Positions 29,089 to 64,000 of a stretch of DNA of 64,000 bases are shown piece by piece. This DNA comes from Sminthopsis crassicaudata (taxonomy: Eukaryota). The stretch spans positions 318,633,765 to 318,697,764 of the forward strand of contig NC_133620.1 of assembly GCF_048593235.1 (NCBI RefSeq), read 5' to 3'. The notes beneath the pieces were generated by a model. It did no database searches. It was not told the origin of the DNA and saw nothing but the letters and a program-made list of their open reading frames with translations. The position numbers and the translations under genes are program-made. Numbering within the stretch: the stretch's first letter is position 1; each line of letters opens with the position of its first letter.

Positions 29089-31984
29089 AGAACTTATATT
29101 CTGCTGTGGGTTGCAAAGATATATACATGTGATCTTTTGAGTACCACTTAACAGAGATAGCAACAGAGATTTCTGGCGCCATGTGAACATCCTTGAAGTA
29201 TGCTAGGAGTACATTCCCTGAATAGGGGACAGCTTATTCAAAGGCTTAGGAGTGGGAAATAATGGACTATATTTGGGAAACATCCAACAGGCCATTTGAG
29301 CAGGAAAATAAAATGAATGGGGAGTCATGATGGAAGTTTTTAAAAAGAGCTTTATTAGGAACCCAGAGAAAAACAAAACCAAAAAAAAAGTCTAGAAAGC
29401 GACAAGTTAACAGAACATTTCTATTAATAAGGAAACTATAGTCTAACCTCAGATTAGCTTGCCTAGCACAGTTTATCATGTACCTAATCTCAAATTCCTT
29501 TTCATAGGATTAGAGCTTTTAGAAAAGGGAGGAAGCTTGTTCTAGTCTCCTCATTTTATAGATGAAGAGACTGATAAATGTATTTTAACTTTTAATATTT
29601 TTTTAAACAACCTCGTGAGGTAGGCAGAATAATGATTGCTTGTCTCCGTTTTACAGAAACTAAGGCTTAGCTAAGTAATTTGTTCACCATCATACAGATA
29701 GGAATGTCTTGATATTCAAAAGCTTTCTCATAAATAACTTAGTCCTGGTATCTTTCCTCTAGAATCTGAACTCAGTCTCTTTAGTGGTCTTATAGCCTCA
29801 GTTGGATTCTAGCATCCCCAGAAACCTCTTCCAAAGATTATTGATAGATTGCTTTTTCTCCTCAGGTTTCTAAAATCATGTTACCTACTTCACTCTTGCT
29901 TTTCTTTTGCTTTATGCAAAAGTTTCTATTATTAAGTTTCTTTTAAGTTTCTATTAAGTTCCTTTAGATCTTAACCTATTTTGTGTGTCATGAAACCCTT
30001 TGGGAATGTATAGAGACCTTTGAACTCTCTTTCAGAATACAGTTTCTAAATGCCCCCCCAAAATGTGTTGATTACAAAGGAACCCAAAAGTTAGTGAAAA
30101 TTGAGATGTGATTTTTTTTTTTTCATCCAAATTTATAGACCTCAACTTAAGAGCTCTTGCTCAAGTTTTTAATATCACAGAGCTCAGGTAACTGAAAAAC
30201 TTCACTTTTTTTCATTCTTAAAATCCTGTTTTCATTGTTTTGAATTGATAAATATTTACTAAAACAAACATCTCCAAATACATGGTAGAAGAGGAGAGGA
30301 TTGGTCATGAAACTGCAAATCTCTATTATGTATGGCTTGCTTTTCTTTTTTAAGAATAAAACTTTTACTATATTATTTTCAAAGATATCCTGCTTCTTTG
30401 TGGACCCTTTTGGTTTCTTTCTGTACATTTTACNNNNNNNNNNNNNNNNNNNNNNNNNNNNNNNNNNNNNNNNNNNNNNNNNNNNNNNNNNNNNNNNNNN
30501 NNNNNNNNNNNNNNNNNNNNNNNNNNNNNNNNNNNNNNNNNNNNNNNNNNNNNNNNNNNNNNNNTTTCCCCTTTCTTCCTTCCCTTCCCCCTNNNNNNNN
30601 NNNNNNNNNNNNNNNNNNNNNNNNNNNNNNNNNNNNNNNNNNNNNNNNNNNNNNNNNNNNNNNNNNNNNNNNNNNNNNNNNNNNNNNNNNNNNNNNNNNN
30701 NNNNNNNNNNNNNNNNNNNNNCTTTAGCTTCTTTCCTTCTTTGTTTTTTTTCTTTCTTTCTTCCTCTCTTTCTCCCTAAACAAATTCCTACAGTGTTTAT
30801 GTCTGAAAATCTAAATCTTATTCTGCAACTCAAGTTAATTACCTCTGTCAGAAGAGCATGTTTCATTGTAGGCCATCTGGAATGTTACCTTAATCACAGT
30901 TCTTAAATTTTTAAAAAGTTGTCAGTTTTTGCAATGTTTTCATCATATAAATTGTTCTTGTTCCATTTACTTAACTTTGCATCAGTTCATAGCAAGTCTT
31001 TGTATGTTTCTTTGAAAACCTTTTTGTCATTCCTTATGGTAAAGTAATATTAATTATTAATATTATTAATTATATAAAATTATGTAAAATTATATTAATA
31101 TACCACAATCTGTTTAATACTTCCCAGTTACTAGGTACTTCTTTACCTTCCACTTCTTTCATCTACAAAAAGGACTGCTATAATTTTTTTGTAAATATGG
31201 GTCATTTTTCTATTTCTTTTATCTCTTTGGGGTATAGTGGTATTTTAGATCAAAGATATAGTTGTAAATTGCTTTCCAGAATGGCTAGCCCTTTTGATAA
31301 TGCTATCAAAAATACACTAATATGCCTTGCCAAGGCCTCTTCAGCAATTGTAATTTTCCTTTTTTTTTTTTTTTTGGTCATCTTTGCTGCTCTGATGGAT
31401 ATGAAATGGAACATCTGAATTGTTTGAATTTGCATTTTTCTAATTATTAGTTATTTGTAGCATTTTTTAAATGTGGGTTTTGACACCTTGAAAATTACTT
31501 CTTGATATTATTTGACCATTTATTAGGGAATGGTTCTTGTTCTTATAAAATTGAATCACTTCCTTATATATTTTGGATGTGAAATCTTATCTTAGAAACT
31601 TTCTACAAGTTTTTTTTTCTCCCCTTGGTAAACTATTTCCCTTTTAAATTTTAACTGAATTGATTGTGCAAATGCATATAAGTTTTATATATTAAATTTT
31701 TTATTTTCCCTTTTATCTTCTCTGAGCCTCTCTATCTCTTCTTTGGTCACAAACTCTTATTTTGTTTTCCTTGTTCCTCTAATTTGGTTATGATATGACT
31801 TTTTATGTTGTTTTGAGAGATTATTCTATATTTGACTTCTACCAGGCTATTTTCCAGTTTCCCCCACAGTTTTTATCTCAGGATTTGAGATCTTTGAGTT
31901 TATCAAACTCTATAGGCCTCTCTGTTCATTTTCCTTTGTACATTGTGTACCTAATCTGTTCTATTAATCAACTTTTGCATTTTT

Positions 31985-33706
31985 TATTAACTTTATAATT
32001 ATAAAAATATTTTGACAGTACATATGCATGAGTAATTTTTTTAATAACATTATCCCTTGTATTCATTTTTCCAAATTTTCTCCTCTCTCCCTCTACTCCC
32101 TCCCCTAGATAACAGGCAATCCCATACATTTTACATGTGTTACAGTATAACCTAGATACAATATATGTGTGTAAATCCAATTTTCTTGTTGCACTTTAAG
32201 ATTGGATTCCGAAGGTATAAGTAACCTGGGTAGAAAGACAGTAGTGCTAACAGTTTACATTCACTTCCCAGTGTTCCTTCTCTGAGTGTAGTTGTTTCTG
32301 TCCATCATTGATCAACTGGAAGTGAGTTGAATCTTCTTTATGTTGAAGATATCTACTTCCATCAGAATATATCTTCACCCCGTATTGTTGTTGAAGTGTA
32401 TAGTGATCTCCTGGTTCTGCTCATTTCACTCAGCATCAGTTCATGTAAGTCTCTCAAAACTTCTCTGTATTCATCCTGCTCATCATTTCTTACAGAGCAA
32501 TAATATTCCATAAGATTCATATACCATAATTTACCCAACCATTCTCCAATTGATGAACATCCATTCATTTTCCAGTTTCTAGCCACTACGAAAAGGGCTG
32601 CCACAAACATTTTGACACATACAGGTCCCTTTCCCCTCTTTAGTATTTCTTTGGGATATAAGCCCAGTAGTAGCACTGCTGGACCAAAGGGTATGCACAG
32701 TTTGATAACTTTTTGGGCATAGTTCCAAATTGCTCTCCAGAATGGTTGGATTCTTTCACAACTCCACCAACAATGCATCAGTGTCCCAGTTTTCCCACAG
32801 CCCCTCCAACATTCATTATTATTTGTTCCTGTCATCTTAGCCAATCTGACAGTGTGTAGTGGTATCTCAGAGTTGTCTTAATTTGCATTTTTCTGATCAG
32901 TAGTGATTTGGAACACTCTTTCATATGAATGCATATAATTTCAATGTCATCATCTGAGAATTGTCTGTTCATATCCTTTGACCATTTATCAATTGGAGAA
33001 TGGTTTGATTTCTTATAAATTAGGGTCAATTCTCTATATATTTTGGAAATAAGGCCTTTATCAGAACCTTTAACTGTAAAAATATTTTCCCAATTTGTTA
33101 CTTCCCTTATAATCTTGTTTGCATTAGTTTTGTATGTACAGAAGCTTTTTAGTTTGATGTAATCAAAATCTTCTATTTTGTGATCAATAATGATCTCTAG
33201 TTCTCCTCTGGTCATAAATTCCTTCTTCCTCCACAGGTCTGAGAGGTAGACTATCCTCTGTTCCTCTAATCTATTTATGGTCTCATTCTTTATGCCTAAA
33301 TCATGGACCCATTTTGATCTTATCTTGGTATATGGTGTTAAGTGTGGATCCATATCTAATTTCTGCCATACTAATTTCCAGTTTTCCCAACAGTTTTTTT
33401 TTTCAAATAATGAATTTTTATCCCAAATGTTGGTATCTTTGGGTTTGTCAAACACTAGATTGCTATAGTTGTACCCTTTTTTGTCCTTTGTACCTAATCT
33501 GTTCCACTGATCGACTGGTCTATTTCTTAGCCAATACCAAATGGTTTTGGTGACTGCTGCTACATAATATAGCTTTAGATCAGGTACACCTAGACCACCT
33601 TCATCTGACTTTTTTTTTCATTTATTCCCTTGAAATTCTCGGCCTTTTATTCTTCCATATGAATTTTGTTGATATTTTTTCTAGGTCATTAAAATAGTTT
33701 CTTGGG
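31985..33706 (-). mobile_element. Young 5'-truncated L1 nested in the older L1
   Basis: ORF2 C-terminal ORFs 32832-33455 and 32362-32844; 16-bp TSD CAACTTTTGCATTTTT at 31969-31984 and 33707-33722. Confidence 0.95.
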
Positions 33707-49302: not shown

Positions 49303-51362
49303 AAAGGTTCTAAATTTCCACTGTCTTCACTGGTAGGTGAGCTCTCCCACAAATATTGAGACAAAGACAGGGTTGCTAAAGCTGAGAGGTCTTTTTGAAT
49401 AACTTAACTCAATTAAGAAGTCTATCAGGTATTTTTCTTTTTCTTTTTTTTTTTTCCACCAGAACCATTTACAGAATGTCTCTGTTAGATTTTGTAGTCT
49501 GTTTCTCAGAGACACTTTCCTTGTACATAATCACTATTGTCCTGGAAGCACCCCCTAGGCTTCTCCTTGCAAAAAGCCATTTTCTCCCTAGCATCTTCTA
49601 TGTGGAAAACCTATCTCCCTAGTATTCTTTATAGTGTGATAATTATTATGTATGTTTTTTTTCTTGGGTTCATACAGATCTCTGTGTTTCTCAGAATTTT
49701 TCATATTTGACATTTCTTGCCATAGTAATATTTACCATAGTATTCATATATACCATAGTTGCCTTTCCCTTCTCTCACAACCATGAGCTCCATTTACTTC
49801 TCAACTCTGCAGTCTGACTTCCAACCTATAACTTGAGTTAGAAACTCCTAGATACAAGGTTACCCATATCCCTTAACTGTTAAATCCAGTGGCCTTTTTC
49901 TTAGGCCCCATTTTCCTTTGACACTGTTGACAAGATTCCCTTCCTTTGATTTTTATAACACTTTTGCTTGCTTTTCCTCCCTTTTAACTCCTTCTCAGTC
50001 TCTCTTGCTTGATTGCCATAATGGTCTTCTTCCTTGGTGTAAGTGTCGCCTAGGACTTTATCTTTATCTTAGGTCCTTTTCTTTTTATAGTCTCTCTCAT
50101 TGATCTCATGTTTCCATGGGTTCAGTTATTATCTATTTATAGATGACTCTCATATTTATATCACAGAATCATAGATTTACAGGTAGAAGGCACCTTCAAG
50201 GTCATGTAGTGCAAACTCATTTTATATATGAAGTAATTAAGGCTCAGAGTTGGTTAACTGTGTTGCCTGTTGTCAAATGTCTTTCACTAAGTGTTTGAAA
50301 CTTGTTTTGAATACAGGTCTCCTTTGACTATTTCATGGCTTTTAAAGAAAATAAAATTTGTTGAGTTAATTTGTAATTTTTATTAGAAAGTTTTCTATTT
50401 GCTGACAGAGGATAGATAGTTCTGAAAGGAACTACAAAGGATTAGTATGCTGCTGAGCTGATGATTATTTGGTCTCATTTCCCTTTTCACAATGCACCTC
50501 CTCTCATTTTTACTTTACTTCCCTCATTTTTCACAACAATGATCTCAATGGATATTTATCCTTCCCTGCAAAGGTCAATGTTAGAAAACTTTGGGTAGTT
50601 GCAGGGGGAGGAGGTGCTTCAGTACACAATCTGATAAACTGATTTTCCCTAGTCCAGATGACAAAATGACAAAATAAGCAGATAAGAGAGACAATAAGTG
50701 TAAAAATGTAAAAAAAAATAGTGTTATCTCATGCATGAGTTGTGAACAACATTGTTTGGAATTACAGAGCATATTGCTATTTGATAGTCAAGAATAGCTT
50801 GCAGTTCTGGTAACTCTTTAAAAATCAAGAGACTCTACAAGTTAGGTTCAGTCAGGAGATTCCTCTGAGGAGTATGACCTCTGGTAGCATAGAAGAAGAT
50901 CTCAGAGACATGGGGAGGAGAGAAGAAGAGGCATTACCTTTTTCTTTCCCTCATTGCTAGTGACTTTCAGAGGAGTTACAAAGTAGCAGGCATCACATCC
51001 AACAGGGAATAAATTGAGGAAAGAATTGAAGGCCAAGGAGAGAAGGAGCTTCTGTAGAATATGACCTGGTGGTAGAAAAGAGAGCCAGCTCTGATTGTTA
51101 TAAATTGAATAACAAACTTAGGAAATCCAATTGATTGATCTGCCCAACAAGAAATGCTGCATCTGGGGGATAATCATAAAAGGATACCATAAGAAAGGAA
51201 ATCAATTTAAGTCTTACTCTACTGTAGAAAGTCTGAGTTATTTAGACTGAGAATATTCCTTCCTCGGTGTATCTTTTTTTATACTTATTCTTCCCACTTG
51301 ACCATATATGTAATGACAGAATCTAACCCAGGTTTATTATTTTATTTAATTGTGTTGTTCTA

Positions 51363-53889
51363 ATCCTCAGCATTTTTATACATTAACAACACAATCCAAC
51401 AGCAAGAGATACAAAGAGAAATTCCATTCAAAATAACGGTCGATAGTATCAAATATTTGGGAATATATCTACCAAAGGAGAGTCAGGAATTATATGAGCA
51501 AAATTACAAAACACTTGCCACAAAAATAAAGTCAGATTTAAATAATTGGAAAGACATTTAGTGCTCTTGGATAGGCCGAGCAAATATAATTAAGATGACA
51601 ATACTCCCTAAACTAATCTATTTATTTAGTGCTATACCAATCAGACTTCCAAGAAACTATTTAAATAACCTAGAAAAAATAACAACAGAATTCATATGGA
51701 ACAACAAAAGATCGAGAATTTCAAGGGAAGTAATGAAAAAAAAATTAAGTGAAGGTGGTCTAGCTGTACCTGATCTAGAACTGTATTATAAAGCAACAGT
51801 CACCAAAACCATTTGGTATTGGCTAAGAAATAGACTAGTTGATCAGTGGCATAGGTTAGGTTCACAGGGCAAGATAGTGAATAAAAATAGCAATCTAGTG
51901 TTTGACAAACCCAAAGATCCCAAATTTTGGGATAAGAATTCATTATTTGACAAAAACTGCTGGGAAAACTGGAAATTAGTATGGCAGAAACTAGGCATGG
52001 ACCCACATTTAACACCACATACTAAGATTAGATCAAAATGGGTCCAAGATTTAGGCATAAAGAACGAAATCATAAATAAATTGGAGGAACATGGGATGGT
52101 TTACCTCTCAGACTTGTGGAGGAGGAAGGAGTTTGTGTCCAAGGGAGAACTAGAGACCATTATTGATCACAAAATAGAACATTTTGATTACACCAAATTA
52201 AAAAGTTTCTGCACAAACAAAACTAATGCAAACAAGATTAGAAGGGAAGTAACAAATTGGGAAAACATTTTTACAGTTAAAGGTTCTGATAAAGGCCTCA
52301 TCTCCAAAATATACAGAGAATTGACTTTAATTTATAAGAAATCAAGCCATTCTCCAATTGATAAATGGTCAAAGGATATGAACAGACAATTTTCAGATGA
52401 TGAAATTAAAACTATTTCCACTCATATGAAAGTGTTCCAAATCACTATTGATCAGAGAAATGCAAATTAAGACACCTCTGAGATATCAGTACACACCTGT
52501 CAGATTGGCTAAGATGACAGGAACAAATAATAATGAATGTTGGAGGGGCTGTGGGAAAACCATTCTGGAGAGCAATCTGGAATTATGCCCAAAAAGTTAT
52601 CAAAATGTGCATACCCTTTGACCCAGCCATACTATTACTGGGCTTATATCCCAAGGAAATACTAAAGAAGGGAAAGGGACCTGTATGTGCCAAAATGTTT
52701 GTGGCAGCCCTTTTCATAGTGGCTAGAAGCTGGAAGATGAATGGATGTTCATCAATTGGAGAATGGTTGGGTAAATTATGGTATATGAATGTTATGGAGT
52801 ATTATTGTTCTGTAAGAAATGACCAACAGGAGAAATACAGAGAGGCTTGGAGAGACTTACATCAATTGATGCTAAGTGAAACGAGCAGAACCAGAAGATC
52901 ATTATACACTTCAACAATGATACAGTACGAGGATGTATGCTGATGGAAGTGGATATCTTCAACATAGAGAAGAGCTAATCCAATTCCAATTGATTAATGA
53001 TGGACAGAATCAGCTACATCCAGAAAAGAAACACTGGGAAATGAGTGTAAACTGTTATTTTTACCTTCTGAATCCAATTCTTCCTGTGCAACAAAAATTC
53101 GGTTCTACACACATATATTGTATCTAGAATATACTGTAATATATTTAACATGTATAAGACTGCCTGCCATCTGGGGGAGGGGGTTGGGGGAGGAAGGGAA
53201 AAAATCTGAATAGAAGTAAGTGCAAGGGATAATGTTGTAAAAAATTACCCATGCATATGTACTGTCAAAAAAAAAAAGTTATAATTATAAAATTAAATAA
53301 AAATTAAATTTAAAACAAAAAAAAAAGATAATTGTATCAGCTCTGGGATTGGCCATCAATGCCTGGGCAAGTTATGAGTATGACAGATTACTATAATACT
53401 ATTGTGGTATAAAAAGTGATGAAGGGACAGTTTCCAAAAATCTGAAAAGATTTGTATGAACTGATGCAAAGTGAAATGAACAGGAAGAAGAGAAAAACTT
53501 ATAAGATGATAAGATTATGAAGGTAATCAATTCTAAAAGACTTAGGAACTCTGATCAGCGCACAATGATCCACCACAGCACTAAAGAACTCAGGATAAAA
53601 CAAGCTAGCTCCCTCGAGATGAAGGGCTGACAGAGTAAGAGATCAAAGCATATTTTTTGGCATGGTTGAGATTGGAGTTTGCTTTATCTGATTGTGCACA
53701 TTTGTAATTGGCTTTATTTTCTTGCTTCTCAATAAGTATGTGTGTGGGGGGAGTAGAAAACAAGAGGAATAGAACTCAGCTGAAGTGTTATATCCCACTT
53801 TGGGATTCCCCTTGTGAATTCTTTTTCCTGAAATTTTAGTGCACTGATTTATCTATCTATTAAAGTGCTATTTAATCACTGTTAAAAAA
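51363..53889 (+). mobile_element. 5'-truncated young L1 (51363-53326) plus about 560 bp of 3'-transduced sequence and a second A-tail
   Basis: ORF2 C-terminal ORFs 51595-52470 and 52533-52943; L1 poly(A) ends at 53326; perfect 15-bp TSD AATTGTGTTGTTCTA at 51348-51362 and 53890-53904. Confidence 0.9.
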
Positions 53890-54159
53890 AATTGTGTTGT
53901 TCTATTTAATAGTTCTAAGAACTATTGTTCTGACAATGGCTGCTCAGTAAATAGTCAATAGCATTGCTTGTAAATACACTGTTGGGAAATTATTACAGTT
54001 TTATAATTTTTATATTATAGCTTTAGGAGAGATAACCCATGGAGAACTTTGAACCTCTGAGGGTAGCCTGGAAAGAATTGGGAGGGTGATAACCCAGAAG
54101 GAGAGCTCCACTTATATAGCAAGAAAGTTCTTTTAGGACTGATGAAGCAATTTAGGGTA

Positions 54160-54395
54160 ATTTGGTGGCACAGTGGTTAGAGTACCAGGCTTGAATGGGA
54201 AAGATTCACTATCTTAAGTTCAAATCCAGCCTTGGATTGTGCTTTGTGACTTTAGGCAGGTTACTTAACTTTCTGTGCCTAAGTTTCCTCATCTGTCATA
54301 TGACCTGGAGAAGGAAGTGGCAGACCTCTTCAGTATCTTTGCTAAGAAAACTCCAAATGGGGTCACACAGAGTTGGATATGAACAACAAAAAAAG
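54160..54395 (+). mobile_element. MAR1-type CORE-SINE
   Basis: ggtggcacagtggttagag head; core; ctggagaaggaagtggc..cagtatctttgc tail. Confidence 0.8.
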
Positions 54396-56015
54396 TAGCA
54401 GTCTTGTCCAGGTTTTCCATATGGATTAAAACTACCTTTTTTCTGAATTCATGAAAGCAGATGGACAAGATTTGGACTTCTTTTTGTAAAGCTTTTAAAG
54501 CCCATGTCAAATGTTACTTCTCTTGGGCCTGAATTTCTTTGTCTGTAAAACAAAAGTGTTGGACTAGAAGATCTCTGAGGCCATTTCCAACCTTAAGTCC
54601 TATGAAGCCTTTCTTGATTTTTAATATAATTTGGCATTCTTTCATCTCTCCTGCCCCCCATTCTGAACTTCATAGAAAACTTTGTACCTCTTTAATTCTC
54701 TTCTTAAAATGTTATTTTGTATCATATATTAATGTTATTAATATATTATTTTGTATCAGTTCTCACCACCATCTCTACTATAACGGTACTGCCTCATGAG
54801 AATCAAAATATAGCTGATAAGTTAGTTGTGTTTTTCTTCCATTTATCTTACAGAGCTTACTCTGTTATCTACAGAGCAACATTCCCCATGGTGACAAGGC
54901 AGCAGAGTCTTGTGCTACAGAACAAATTGTTTGCATTTAATTGAAAACTATAAAAATAAAATTTGATAGAGTACCCAGTTATAAGAACCCTCACTAGGTT
55001 CTATGTAAAACAGCATTAAAAACATAATTATCCTGATTTTGCAATCTCACCATGCTCCTGATCTTTCAACCATTGAATTCCTTTCTTTTTGTTTTCACCA
55101 TTTCTCGTTAGTCAGGAGTCTGGGGACATGGGGCTTTCTTTTTATGCTTAGGGAAATTTTAAAAGCAAACTAGAAAGTTTCAGAAAGATAATTTCTCAAT
55201 TGAGAAAACTAGGACTTATGCTCAAACTTTGATCATGGATTGTAGATTTAGAGTAGGAAGAAATCTTAGACATCATCTTGCCAGTCCCTTTCATTTTACC
55301 ATCAGGGAAAGTAAGAGTTAGAAAAGCAAAATGATTGCCTAATATTAATTGATATATATCAATAGCTTACTTGATTGGAATCATTTTCAGTAGAAGATTA
55401 ATGCACAGCTGGTTAGACTAGAATCTTGTTATTTAAAAGCATTAGGAGTTAAATACATTGGCAACTCAAGTATATTAATATGATCAGGCATTGTTAAGTG
55501 CCAGTTATACATATAATTTAATGTACTTGGGGGAGACATGCATAATTTTTAAGGCCAGGCGAAAGAAGAAAAAATGAGAAATGATTAAATATACTATATA
55601 GGAAGTGATGGATTCCCATGAATTTTCTTGCTCAATTGCTGTGTTCCTGATTTCCTGAAGAACACTTGAAAGAAACTTTCTCAGCTTTCCCCTACTCCTA
55701 ATACAATAAGGAACAACATTCATGATTTCCTTAGTTCTGGACCTGGACCATATCCTCAGAATGAAAAGAAGCCTAATGTTTGGAATGACATTACTATGTG
55801 ATTGTTGGAATGTCAAGAGACTGATGTTGATTTGAAACCAGAAATCAAGTGTTAAATACTTCTGTATACAAAGGAAACGTCAATAGAACATGTTACAGAA
55901 CAGCTTTAATGGTACAGGAGTGCTTGCCAACAGTCATGACCTGAGTTTTGTATTTTTGTATTGCTTTTTTTTCCCCCCCAAGGAAATGACCAGATCTCAT
56001 TTTGTTTTCTCTTAG

Positions 56016-63390: not shown

Positions 63391-63414
63391 TTTTTTTCCT
63401 GTTGCTTGTGATAA

Positions 63415-64000
63415 TTTTTAAAATTAATTTTATAATTATAACTTTTTTTTTGACAGTACATATGCATAGGTAATTTTTTTTTACAACATTATCCCTCGTA
63501 CTCCCTTCTGTTCCGAATTTTTTCCCCTCCTTCCCTCCATCCCCTCCCCTAGATGGCAGGCATTCCCATACATATTAAATATCTTATAGTATATCCTAGG
63601 TACAATATATATGTGCAGAACCGAATTTTGTTGTTGTTGTTGCAAAGGAAGAATTGGATTCGGAAGGTAAAAATAATCTGGGAAGAAAAACAAAAAAAAA
63701 ATGCTCATAGTTTACACTCCATTTCCCAGTGTTCCTTTTCTGGGTGTAGCTGATTCTGTCCATCATTGATCAGTTGGAATTGGATTAGTTCTTTTCTATG
63801 TTGAAAATATCCACTTCTATCAGAATACATCCTCATACAGTATCATTGTTGAAGTGTATAATGATCTCCTAGTTCTGCTCGTTTCACACAGCATCAGTTG
63901 ATGTAAGTCTCTCCAAGTCTCTCTGTATTCCTCCTGTTGGTCATTTCTTACAGAACAATAATATTCCATAACATTCATATACCATAATTTACCCAACCAT
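63415..64000 (-). mobile_element. Young L1 3' end running off the window
   Basis: Same young 3' UTR type as the 32 kb and 53 kb copies. Confidence 0.92.

What the first reader, a model, noticed from the sequence alone, without database searches (positions are those of the whole stretch)
51348..53904. Probable L1-mediated 3' transduction carrying about 560 bp of donor flank
Seen: a perfect 15-bp TSD AATTGTGTTGTTCTA flanks 51363-53889, not just the L1. The L1 poly(A) ends at 53326 and no matching TSD follows it. Then come 557 bp of other sequence, ATTAAA at 53859-53864 and an A-run starting about 20 nt later at 53884. The extra segment resembles a much older L1 3' end. Known: read-through of the weak L1 poly(A) signal gives this double-tail structure. 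Inference: the source L1 sat upstream of an old L1 and used its poly(A) site, so the segment tags an active marsupial source element.
Basis: partly seen in the sequence, partly recalled or inferred. Interest (0 to 1): 0.7.

Follow-up and report, generated by a model that had tools for sequence, protein, structure and literature searches.

The report
L1 insertion with probable 3' transduction
A truncated L1 jumping-gene copy in a dasyurid marsupial genome landed in one event together with 557 bases of a much older, decayed L1 tail, most likely because its parent's transcript ran past its own stop signal; this is ordinary L1 behaviour, and the parent could not be traced here.

Summary
A perfect 15-bp direct repeat (51348-51362 and 53890-53904) brackets a composite:
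- a 5'-truncated L1 (51363-53326) with its own poly(A) signals and an A10 run;
- 557 bp (53327-53883) that are a far more decayed L1 3' end;
- the only downstream ATTAAA (53859-53864);
- a short A-run starting 20 nt after that signal.

There is no duplication after the first tail.

The layout is that of a classical L1 3' transduction: the active-type L1 lies 5', the carried DNA lies 3', there are two tails and one outer duplication. I rate this about 0.65.

The decisive test, finding a near-identical donor next to a longer L1, could not be run.

Rivals not excluded:
- a second retrocopy inserted into the first A-tail;
- a fragment of a host transcript mobilised in trans;
- a template-switch chimera.

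The L1 part has three ORF2 lesions, so an "active source" is not shown.

L1 3' transduction is textbook. It is already documented in a dasyurid, in Tasmanian devil tumours. This scan has 17 notes holding "L1 transduction", the eight shown all from this genome. This is a new instance of a known kind, of low interest.

The parts
51348..51362 (+). Left copy of the 15-bp target-site duplication AATTGTGTTGTTCTA. The bottom-strand nick site reads AATT/AAAT, which keeps the TT/AA core of the L1 endonuclease site.
51363..53326 (+). 5'-truncated L1: the 3' 1.58 kb of ORF2, the 3' UTR and an A-rich tail. It is broken by an in-frame stop at 51559-51561, a frame change near 52430 and a deletion of about 43 bp with a frame change near 52555-52560. 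Its 3' UTR lacks about 31 bp that copies B and C have.
   Evidence: best protein matches are Sarcophilus harrisii L1 fragments at 74-87%; three reading frames against a wombat L1 protein
53292..53308 (+). The L1's own overlapping poly(A) signals (ATTAAA, AATAAA, ATTAAA), which a read-through transcript would have passed.
53317..53326 (+). Internal A10 run, the first 'tail'. No target-site duplication follows it.
53327..53883 (+). Carried 557-bp segment: the decayed 3' end of a much older L1 in the same orientation. It holds an ORF2 C-terminal remnant with two in-frame stops and a frame change in about 55 codons, and a G-rich tract about 135 nt before its end, as in the young L1. L1 homology is clear from about 53350; the first ~23 nt are of uncertain origin.
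53859..53864 (+). ATTAAA, the only canonical poly(A) hexamer between 53309 and the end of the insert. It lies 20 nt before the terminal A-run.
53884..53889 (+). Terminal A-run: 6 A, or 8 counting the two A that open the duplication. This is the second 'tail'.
53890..53904 (+). Right copy of the 15-bp target-site duplication.

Best explanation
One retrotransposition event inserted a single RNA made of two parts: the 3' 1.96 kb of an L1, and the 557 nt that lay directly downstream of that L1 at its parent locus.

At the parent locus (inferred) the L1 sat inside, or just upstream of, an old L1 in the same orientation. RNA polymerase II passed the L1's own signals at 53292-53308. The transcript was then cleaved and polyadenylated about 20 nt after the next canonical signal, the old L1's ATTAAA.

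L1 ORF2p nicked the target at AATT/AAAT and primed on the new poly(A) tail. It copied the old-L1 piece, the genomically encoded A10 and the L1 body, and stopped within ORF2 (5' truncation). The staggered second nick produced the 15-bp duplication.

Shown: the structure, the single outer duplication, the greater age of the carried piece, and the positions of the signals. Inferred: the existence and layout of the donor locus, read-through as the cause, and the L1's own promoter as the driver.
For: - The perfect 15-bp duplication lies exactly at the L1 5' edge and directly after the second A-run. It is unique in the window, and no shuffle reached it.
- No duplication follows the first tail.
- The carried piece is not part of this L1 family's 3' end. 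Copies B and C end at the canonical terminus, without it.
- The carried piece was already old when it arrived. It has 3 disabling lesions in about 165 nt of former coding sequence, against 3 in about 1580 nt for the L1 beside it, and both have spent the same time at this site. Its K2P distance to every other L1 copy in the window is 0.63-0.88, whereas the young L1 is 0.07-0.34 from them.
- ATTAAA at 53859 is the first canonical hexamer after the L1's own signals, and the A-run starts 20 nt after it.
- The geometry (active-type L1 5', other sequence 3') is that of 3' transduction. It is the reverse of described L1 chimeras, where L1 is the 3' partner (bioRxiv 10.1101/2025.02.02.635956).
- The supposed donor layout is common. 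In this same window, L1 copy B abuts an older same-orientation L1.
- 3' transduction by dasyurid L1 is documented: 94 events and 35 source elements in Tasmanian devil tumours (bioRxiv 10.1101/2022.05.27.493404).
Against: - No donor locus was seen.
- The terminal A-run is only 6-8 nt.
- The carried piece is itself an L1 3' end that seems to run to a native-looking terminus. That is also what an independent insertion into the first A-tail would look like, and its duplication would then be hidden in the A-runs.
- The L1 part has three ORF2 lesions. If they were inherited, the template was not an autonomous element.
Confidence: 0.65

Rival explanations
1. Two sequential events. The L1 inserted first and made the 15-bp duplication. 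Later a second retrocopy, the 557-bp old-L1-type RNA end, inserted into the L1's A-tail. A-tails are favoured endonuclease targets, and the second event's own duplication would consist of A's and be invisible.
For: A-runs flank the 557-bp piece on both sides: A10 at 53317-53326 and A8 at 53884-53891. The piece ends 20 nt after its own ATTAAA, like a free-standing retrocopy. It has the layout of an L1 3' end up to a native-looking terminus.
Against: The piece is the most decayed L1 sequence in the window, with two stops and a frame change in about 55 codons. It is therefore unlikely to be a copy of an element that was still active after the younger L1 arrived. It would have to be a rare RNA mobilised in trans that hit one particular ~20-nt tail. 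The right A-run (6-8 nt) would also have to hold the second element's tail, its duplication and the rest of the first tail.
Confidence: 0.1
2. A retrocopy of the 3' end of a host or read-through transcript not driven by the L1's own promoter. The transcript happened to contain a defective L1 followed by an old L1 end, was mobilised in trans, and was 5'-truncated within the L1. The donor layout is the same as in a transduction, but no active source element is tagged.
For: The L1 part carries a stop, a frameshift and a deletion in ORF2, which could have been inherited from the template. The insert is 5'-truncated, so the promoter that was used cannot be seen.
Against: By established knowledge, L1 proteins prefer their own RNA in cis, which makes trans events much rarer than transductions. 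Three lesions in 1.58 kb are also compatible with 1-3% decay after insertion.
Confidence: 0.12
3. A chimeric retrocopy. Reverse transcription began on a polyadenylated RNA ending in the old L1 piece, then switched template to the poly(A) end of an L1 RNA (or the two RNAs were ligated). No locus ever held the two parts side by side.
For: There is one outer duplication, both parts are in the same orientation, and there is an A-run at the junction. Template switching by L1 reverse transcriptase is an accepted route to chimeras.
Against: In described chimeras the L1 is the primary template and lies 3', with the partner RNA 5'. Here it is the other way round. Priming would also have had to start on a decayed, non-L1-encoding RNA.
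Confidence: 0.08
4. Not one event at all. Either an assembly join between two repeats, or a chance repeat next to a pre-existing old L1 end.
For: Repeats are prone to misassembly, and the window holds 895 N.
Against: The 15-bp perfect repeat sits exactly at both outer boundaries and was reached by none of 2000 shuffles. No N lies in or near 51200-54100.
Confidence: 0.03

Closest known systems
L1 3' transduction: read-through of the L1 poly(A) signal. From my own knowledge, first shown in cultured cells by Moran et al. 1999 and surveyed in the human genome by Goodier et al. 2000 and Pickeral et al. 2000. In a dasyurid: Tasmanian devil tumours, bioRxiv 10.1101/2022.05.27.493404.
   Same: A sense L1 with its own 3' end and an internal A-run, non-family DNA directly 3' of it, a poly(A) signal about 20 nt before a second A-run, one target-site duplication around the whole, a TT/AA-type nick site, and 5' truncation.
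   Different: The donor is not identified. The carried DNA is itself an old L1 3' end rather than unique sequence, which makes it a poorer tag. The second tail is only 6-8 A. This is a germline, fixed-looking copy in another dasyurid, not a somatic tumour event.
L1 chimeric insertions (U6/L1, Alu/L1, mRNA/L1) formed by template switching or RNA ligation (bioRxiv 10.1101/2025.02.02.635956)
   Same: Two RNA-derived parts in the same orientation inside one target-site duplication.
   Different: In those chimeras the L1 is the 3' part and the partner is 5'. Here the active-type L1 is 5', and an A-run lies at the junction.
Nested or sequential L1 insertions, a younger L1 next to or inside an older L1; for example copy B next to an older L1 at 30722-33705 of this window
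   Same: A younger L1 directly followed by an older L1 3' part in the same orientation.
   Different: In a simple nest the duplication flanks the younger L1 only. Here it flanks both parts and nothing follows the first tail, unless the second event's duplication is hidden in the A-runs.

Membership tests
L1 3' transduction | A sense-oriented L1 that reaches its canonical 3' end, with its own poly(A) signal and an A-run | tested here: met
   The alignment with copies B and C shows the canonical terminus. Signals lie at 53292-53308 and the A10 run at 53317-53326.
L1 3' transduction | Sequence that is not part of that L1 family follows the first tail directly | tested here: met
   Copies B and C lack it. 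The segment is 50-59% identical to all other L1 copies over the aligned region.
L1 3' transduction | The extra segment ends with a poly(A) signal 10-30 nt before a second poly(A) tail | tested here: met
   ATTAAA lies at 53859-53864 and the A-run starts at 53884. The tail is very short, 6-8 A.
L1 3' transduction | One target-site duplication encloses the L1 plus the extra segment, with none after the first tail | tested here: met
L1 3' transduction | An endonuclease-type target site (TTTT/AA-like) | tested here: met
   The bottom strand reads AATT/AAAT at the left edge of the duplication, read. This matches 4 of 6 positions of the consensus, including the TT/AA core.
L1 3' transduction | A donor locus exists where the extra segment lies directly 3' of a longer L1 of the same subfamily, with different flanks | not testable with these tools
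No collection on hand holds this genome. There is no second copy in the window.
L1 3' transduction | An empty site in relatives, or polymorphism with all or nothing present (no intermediate allele) | not testable with these tools
   No access to reads or to related genomes.
L1 chimeric insertion (template switch or ligation) | L1 is the 3' partner (primary template) and the partner RNA lies 5' | tested here: not met
   Here the active-type L1 lies 5' and the other piece 3'.
Sequential insertion into an A-tail | The second element belongs to a family or RNA that was mobile after the first insertion | tested here: inconclusive
   The piece is heavily decayed relative to the L1 beside it, which argues against this. 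Without other family members its decay before insertion cannot be measured directly.

The most novel reading that the evidence does not exclude
The composite is not a one-off. It would mark an L1 sublineage in a dasyurid (a group where L1 was proposed to be dying out, PMC5010896) that kept jumping recently and adopted an ancient L1's 3' end and poly(A) site as its own new terminus. Several young copies would then share the same 557-bp tag and point to a still-competent source.
Probability: 0.05. Interest if true: 0.5.

Novelty: new member of a known kind. Interest (0 to 1): 0.22.

Why it matters
3' transduction tags are the standard way to link L1 offspring to their parent elements. In dasyurid marsupials the state of L1 activity has been debated. 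A PCR screen found only 2 of 100 ORF2 fragments intact in the fat-tailed dunnart and suggested near-extinction of L1 (PMC5010896). Tasmanian devil tumours later revealed 35 working source elements through transductions (bioRxiv 10.1101/2022.05.27.493404). A catalogue of germline transductions in this genome, of which this is one candidate among the 17 notes holding both words, could show which L1 loci were last active and when. Taken alone, this locus is an ordinary example. Its tag is repeat-derived, which makes it a weak marker.

Tried and rejected
Before it occurred to me that it might concern the letters themselves, I had sent parts of that stretch to three tools: the search of earlier findings, the search for homologous proteins and Rfam.
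2. Word search with a 52-aa ORF from the carried piece, in the hope that a gene caller had recorded it on other contigs: no candidate.
3. Word search with the 291-aa L1 ORF, to fetch near-identical L1 copies and inspect their 3' flanks. The best hits were Tasmanian devil and wombat fragments at 67-87%, with none from this species, so no loci were worth fetching.
4. The search of earlier findings by sequence: blank.
5. Rfam on 51000-54400: no match, so the carried piece shows no match to a catalogued (Rfam) RNA family such as U6 or 7SL.
6. In-window search for a second copy of the carried piece: only 59-67% matches to other L1s.
7. An inner target-site duplication after the first tail: rejected. 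Only a 7-nt shared word was found, and not at the junction.
8. Dating from the duplication alone: rejected as too weak. Zero differences in 15 positions only bounds divergence at roughly 10% per copy.

Full report
**Observation**

The 15-mer AATTGTGTTGTTCTA occurs exactly twice in the window, at 51348-51362 and 53890-53904, with no mismatch. It is the only perfect direct repeat of 15 nt or more in 49500-55500. I compared the 40 nt left of the L1 with 2000 shuffles of the 700 nt downstream of the L1 tail. The longest shared word never exceeded 13.

The left copy abuts the first base with L1 homology, 51363. The right copy follows an A-run directly.

**The L1 part (51363-53326)**

- It matches other L1 copies in the window over its whole length. 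Copy B (31979-33705, minus strand) is 84% identical. Copy C (63412-64000, minus strand) is 84% overall and 93% over the ORF2 C-terminus. Older copies are 71-78% identical.
- Its 291-aa ORF finds L1 ORF2 fragments of the Tasmanian devil (74-87%) and the wombat (67%) as best hits. That fits a dasyurid marsupial.
- Earlier follow-up notes of this scan name the genome as the fat-tailed dunnart. I did not test that beyond the protein matches.
- The element is 5'-truncated within ORF2.
- Its reading frame is broken three times: an in-frame stop at 51559-51561, a frame change near 52430, and a deletion of about 43 bp with a frame change near 52555-52560.
- Its 3' end matches the canonical family terminus seen in copies B and C.
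- It carries three overlapping canonical signals at 53292-53308 and an A10 run at 53317-53326.
- The last 65 nt form a degenerate A-rich tandem repeat, so the exact L1 boundary is uncertain by a few bases.

**The carried part (53327-53883, 557 nt)**

It has no second copy in the window. It is nonetheless L1-derived:

- Positions 32-354 align at 59-67% with five other L1 copies, at the place that corresponds to the ORF2 C-terminus and the start of the 3' UTR.
- A translated comparison with the young L1's ORF2 C-terminus gives E = 3e-4.
- A G-rich tract lies about 135 nt before its end, as in the young L1.

So it looks like the last ~550 nt of an L1, up to a native-looking terminus.

It is much more decayed than its neighbour. 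The ORF2 remnant has two in-frame stops and a frame change in about 55 codons. That is roughly one lesion per 55 nt, against one per ~530 nt in the L1 part. Its K2P distance to every other L1 copy in the window is 0.63-0.88, while the young L1 is 0.07-0.34 from the same copies.

Both parts have spent the same time at this locus. Most of that decay must therefore predate the insertion.

**Signals**

Between the L1's own signals and the end of the insert there is just one canonical hexamer, ATTAAA at 53859-53864. The terminal A-run begins 20 nt after it. The run is short: 8 A, of which the last two are also the first two bases of the duplication.

Read, the bottom-strand nick site is AATT/AAAT. 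This keeps the TT/AA core of the L1 endonuclease site.

**Mechanism**

The simplest reading is a single target-primed reverse transcription of one RNA. That RNA ran from within an L1, through the L1's genomically encoded tail, into 557 nt of downstream DNA. It was polyadenylated at the first downstream signal. This is an L1 3' transduction.

The donor layout this requires, a younger L1 lying just upstream of an older same-orientation L1 end, is common. Copy B in this same window abuts an older L1 in just this way, though it is not the donor.

**Rivals**

- **Second retrocopy into the first A-tail.** This would hide its own duplication in the A-runs and leave the same picture. The decay of the carried piece argues against it, because the piece would have to be a rare RNA mobilised in trans. 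The shortness of the right A-run also argues against it.
- **Host transcript mobilised in trans.** A transcript containing both parts would have the same donor layout but would tag no active L1. The three ORF2 lesions keep this option open.
- **Template-switch or ligation chimera.** In described chimeras the L1 is the 3' partner. Here it is the 5' partner.
- **Assembly error or chance.** This is unlikely, given that the repeat lies exactly at both outer boundaries.

**What could not be done**

It needs the genome or reads.

- The protein collections hold no sequences of this species.
- The other DNA collections hold prokaryotic, viral, plasmid or metagenome records.

**Comparison with what is known**

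L1 3' transduction is textbook biology, from my own knowledge of Moran 1999, Goodier 2000 and Pickeral 2000.

For dasyurids, a PCR screen found only 2 of 100 intact ORF2 fragments in the fat-tailed dunnart, with a mean pairwise distance of 0.148. The authors proposed a decline of L1 activity (PMC5010896). Later work on Tasmanian devil tumours found 94 insertions with 3' transductions and 35 source elements (bioRxiv 10.1101/2022.05.27.493404).

This scan holds 17 notes with the words 'L1 transduction'; the eight shown are all from this genome. So this locus is one more candidate instance of a known process.

**Verdict**

- The claim of an 'active source' is not established.
- Interest is low.

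Noticed in passing
window 30722-33705 (minus strand): L1 copy B (31979-33705) ends with a very short tail and directly abuts an older L1 in the same orientation (about 30722-31978), which runs into an N gap at 30721. This is the layout the donor of the finding is supposed to have. It is not the donor: copy B is 84% identical to the young L1, and the older piece is 59% identical to the carried segment.
   Followed up: partly
window 63412-64000 (minus strand): L1 copy C is the closest relative of the young L1 in the window: 93% identity over the ORF2 C-terminus, K2P 0.07. The end of the window cuts it off.
   Followed up: partly
window 53269-53333: The L1's 3' terminus is a degenerate A-rich tandem repeat with a period of about 23 nt. 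The motif A10-G-(T)TA occurs at both 53268-53281 and 53317-53330, so the boundary between the L1 and the carried DNA is uncertain by a few bases.
   Followed up: partly
window 53050-53075 and 52555-52560: Compared with copies B and C, the young L1 lacks about 31 bp in its 3' UTR. Compared with copy B and related proteins, it lacks about 43 bp in ORF2. Whether these are private deletions or subfamily markers is unknown. If they are shared, they would help to recognise the donor and siblings.
   Followed up: no
same genome, other windows (scan notes): 17 notes of this scan hold the words 'L1 transduction'; the eight shown are all from this genome. One (s1-179232) mentions about 540 bp of foreign DNA, a size similar to the 557 bp here. 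I could not see its sequence, so I could not check whether it is a sibling.
   Followed up: no
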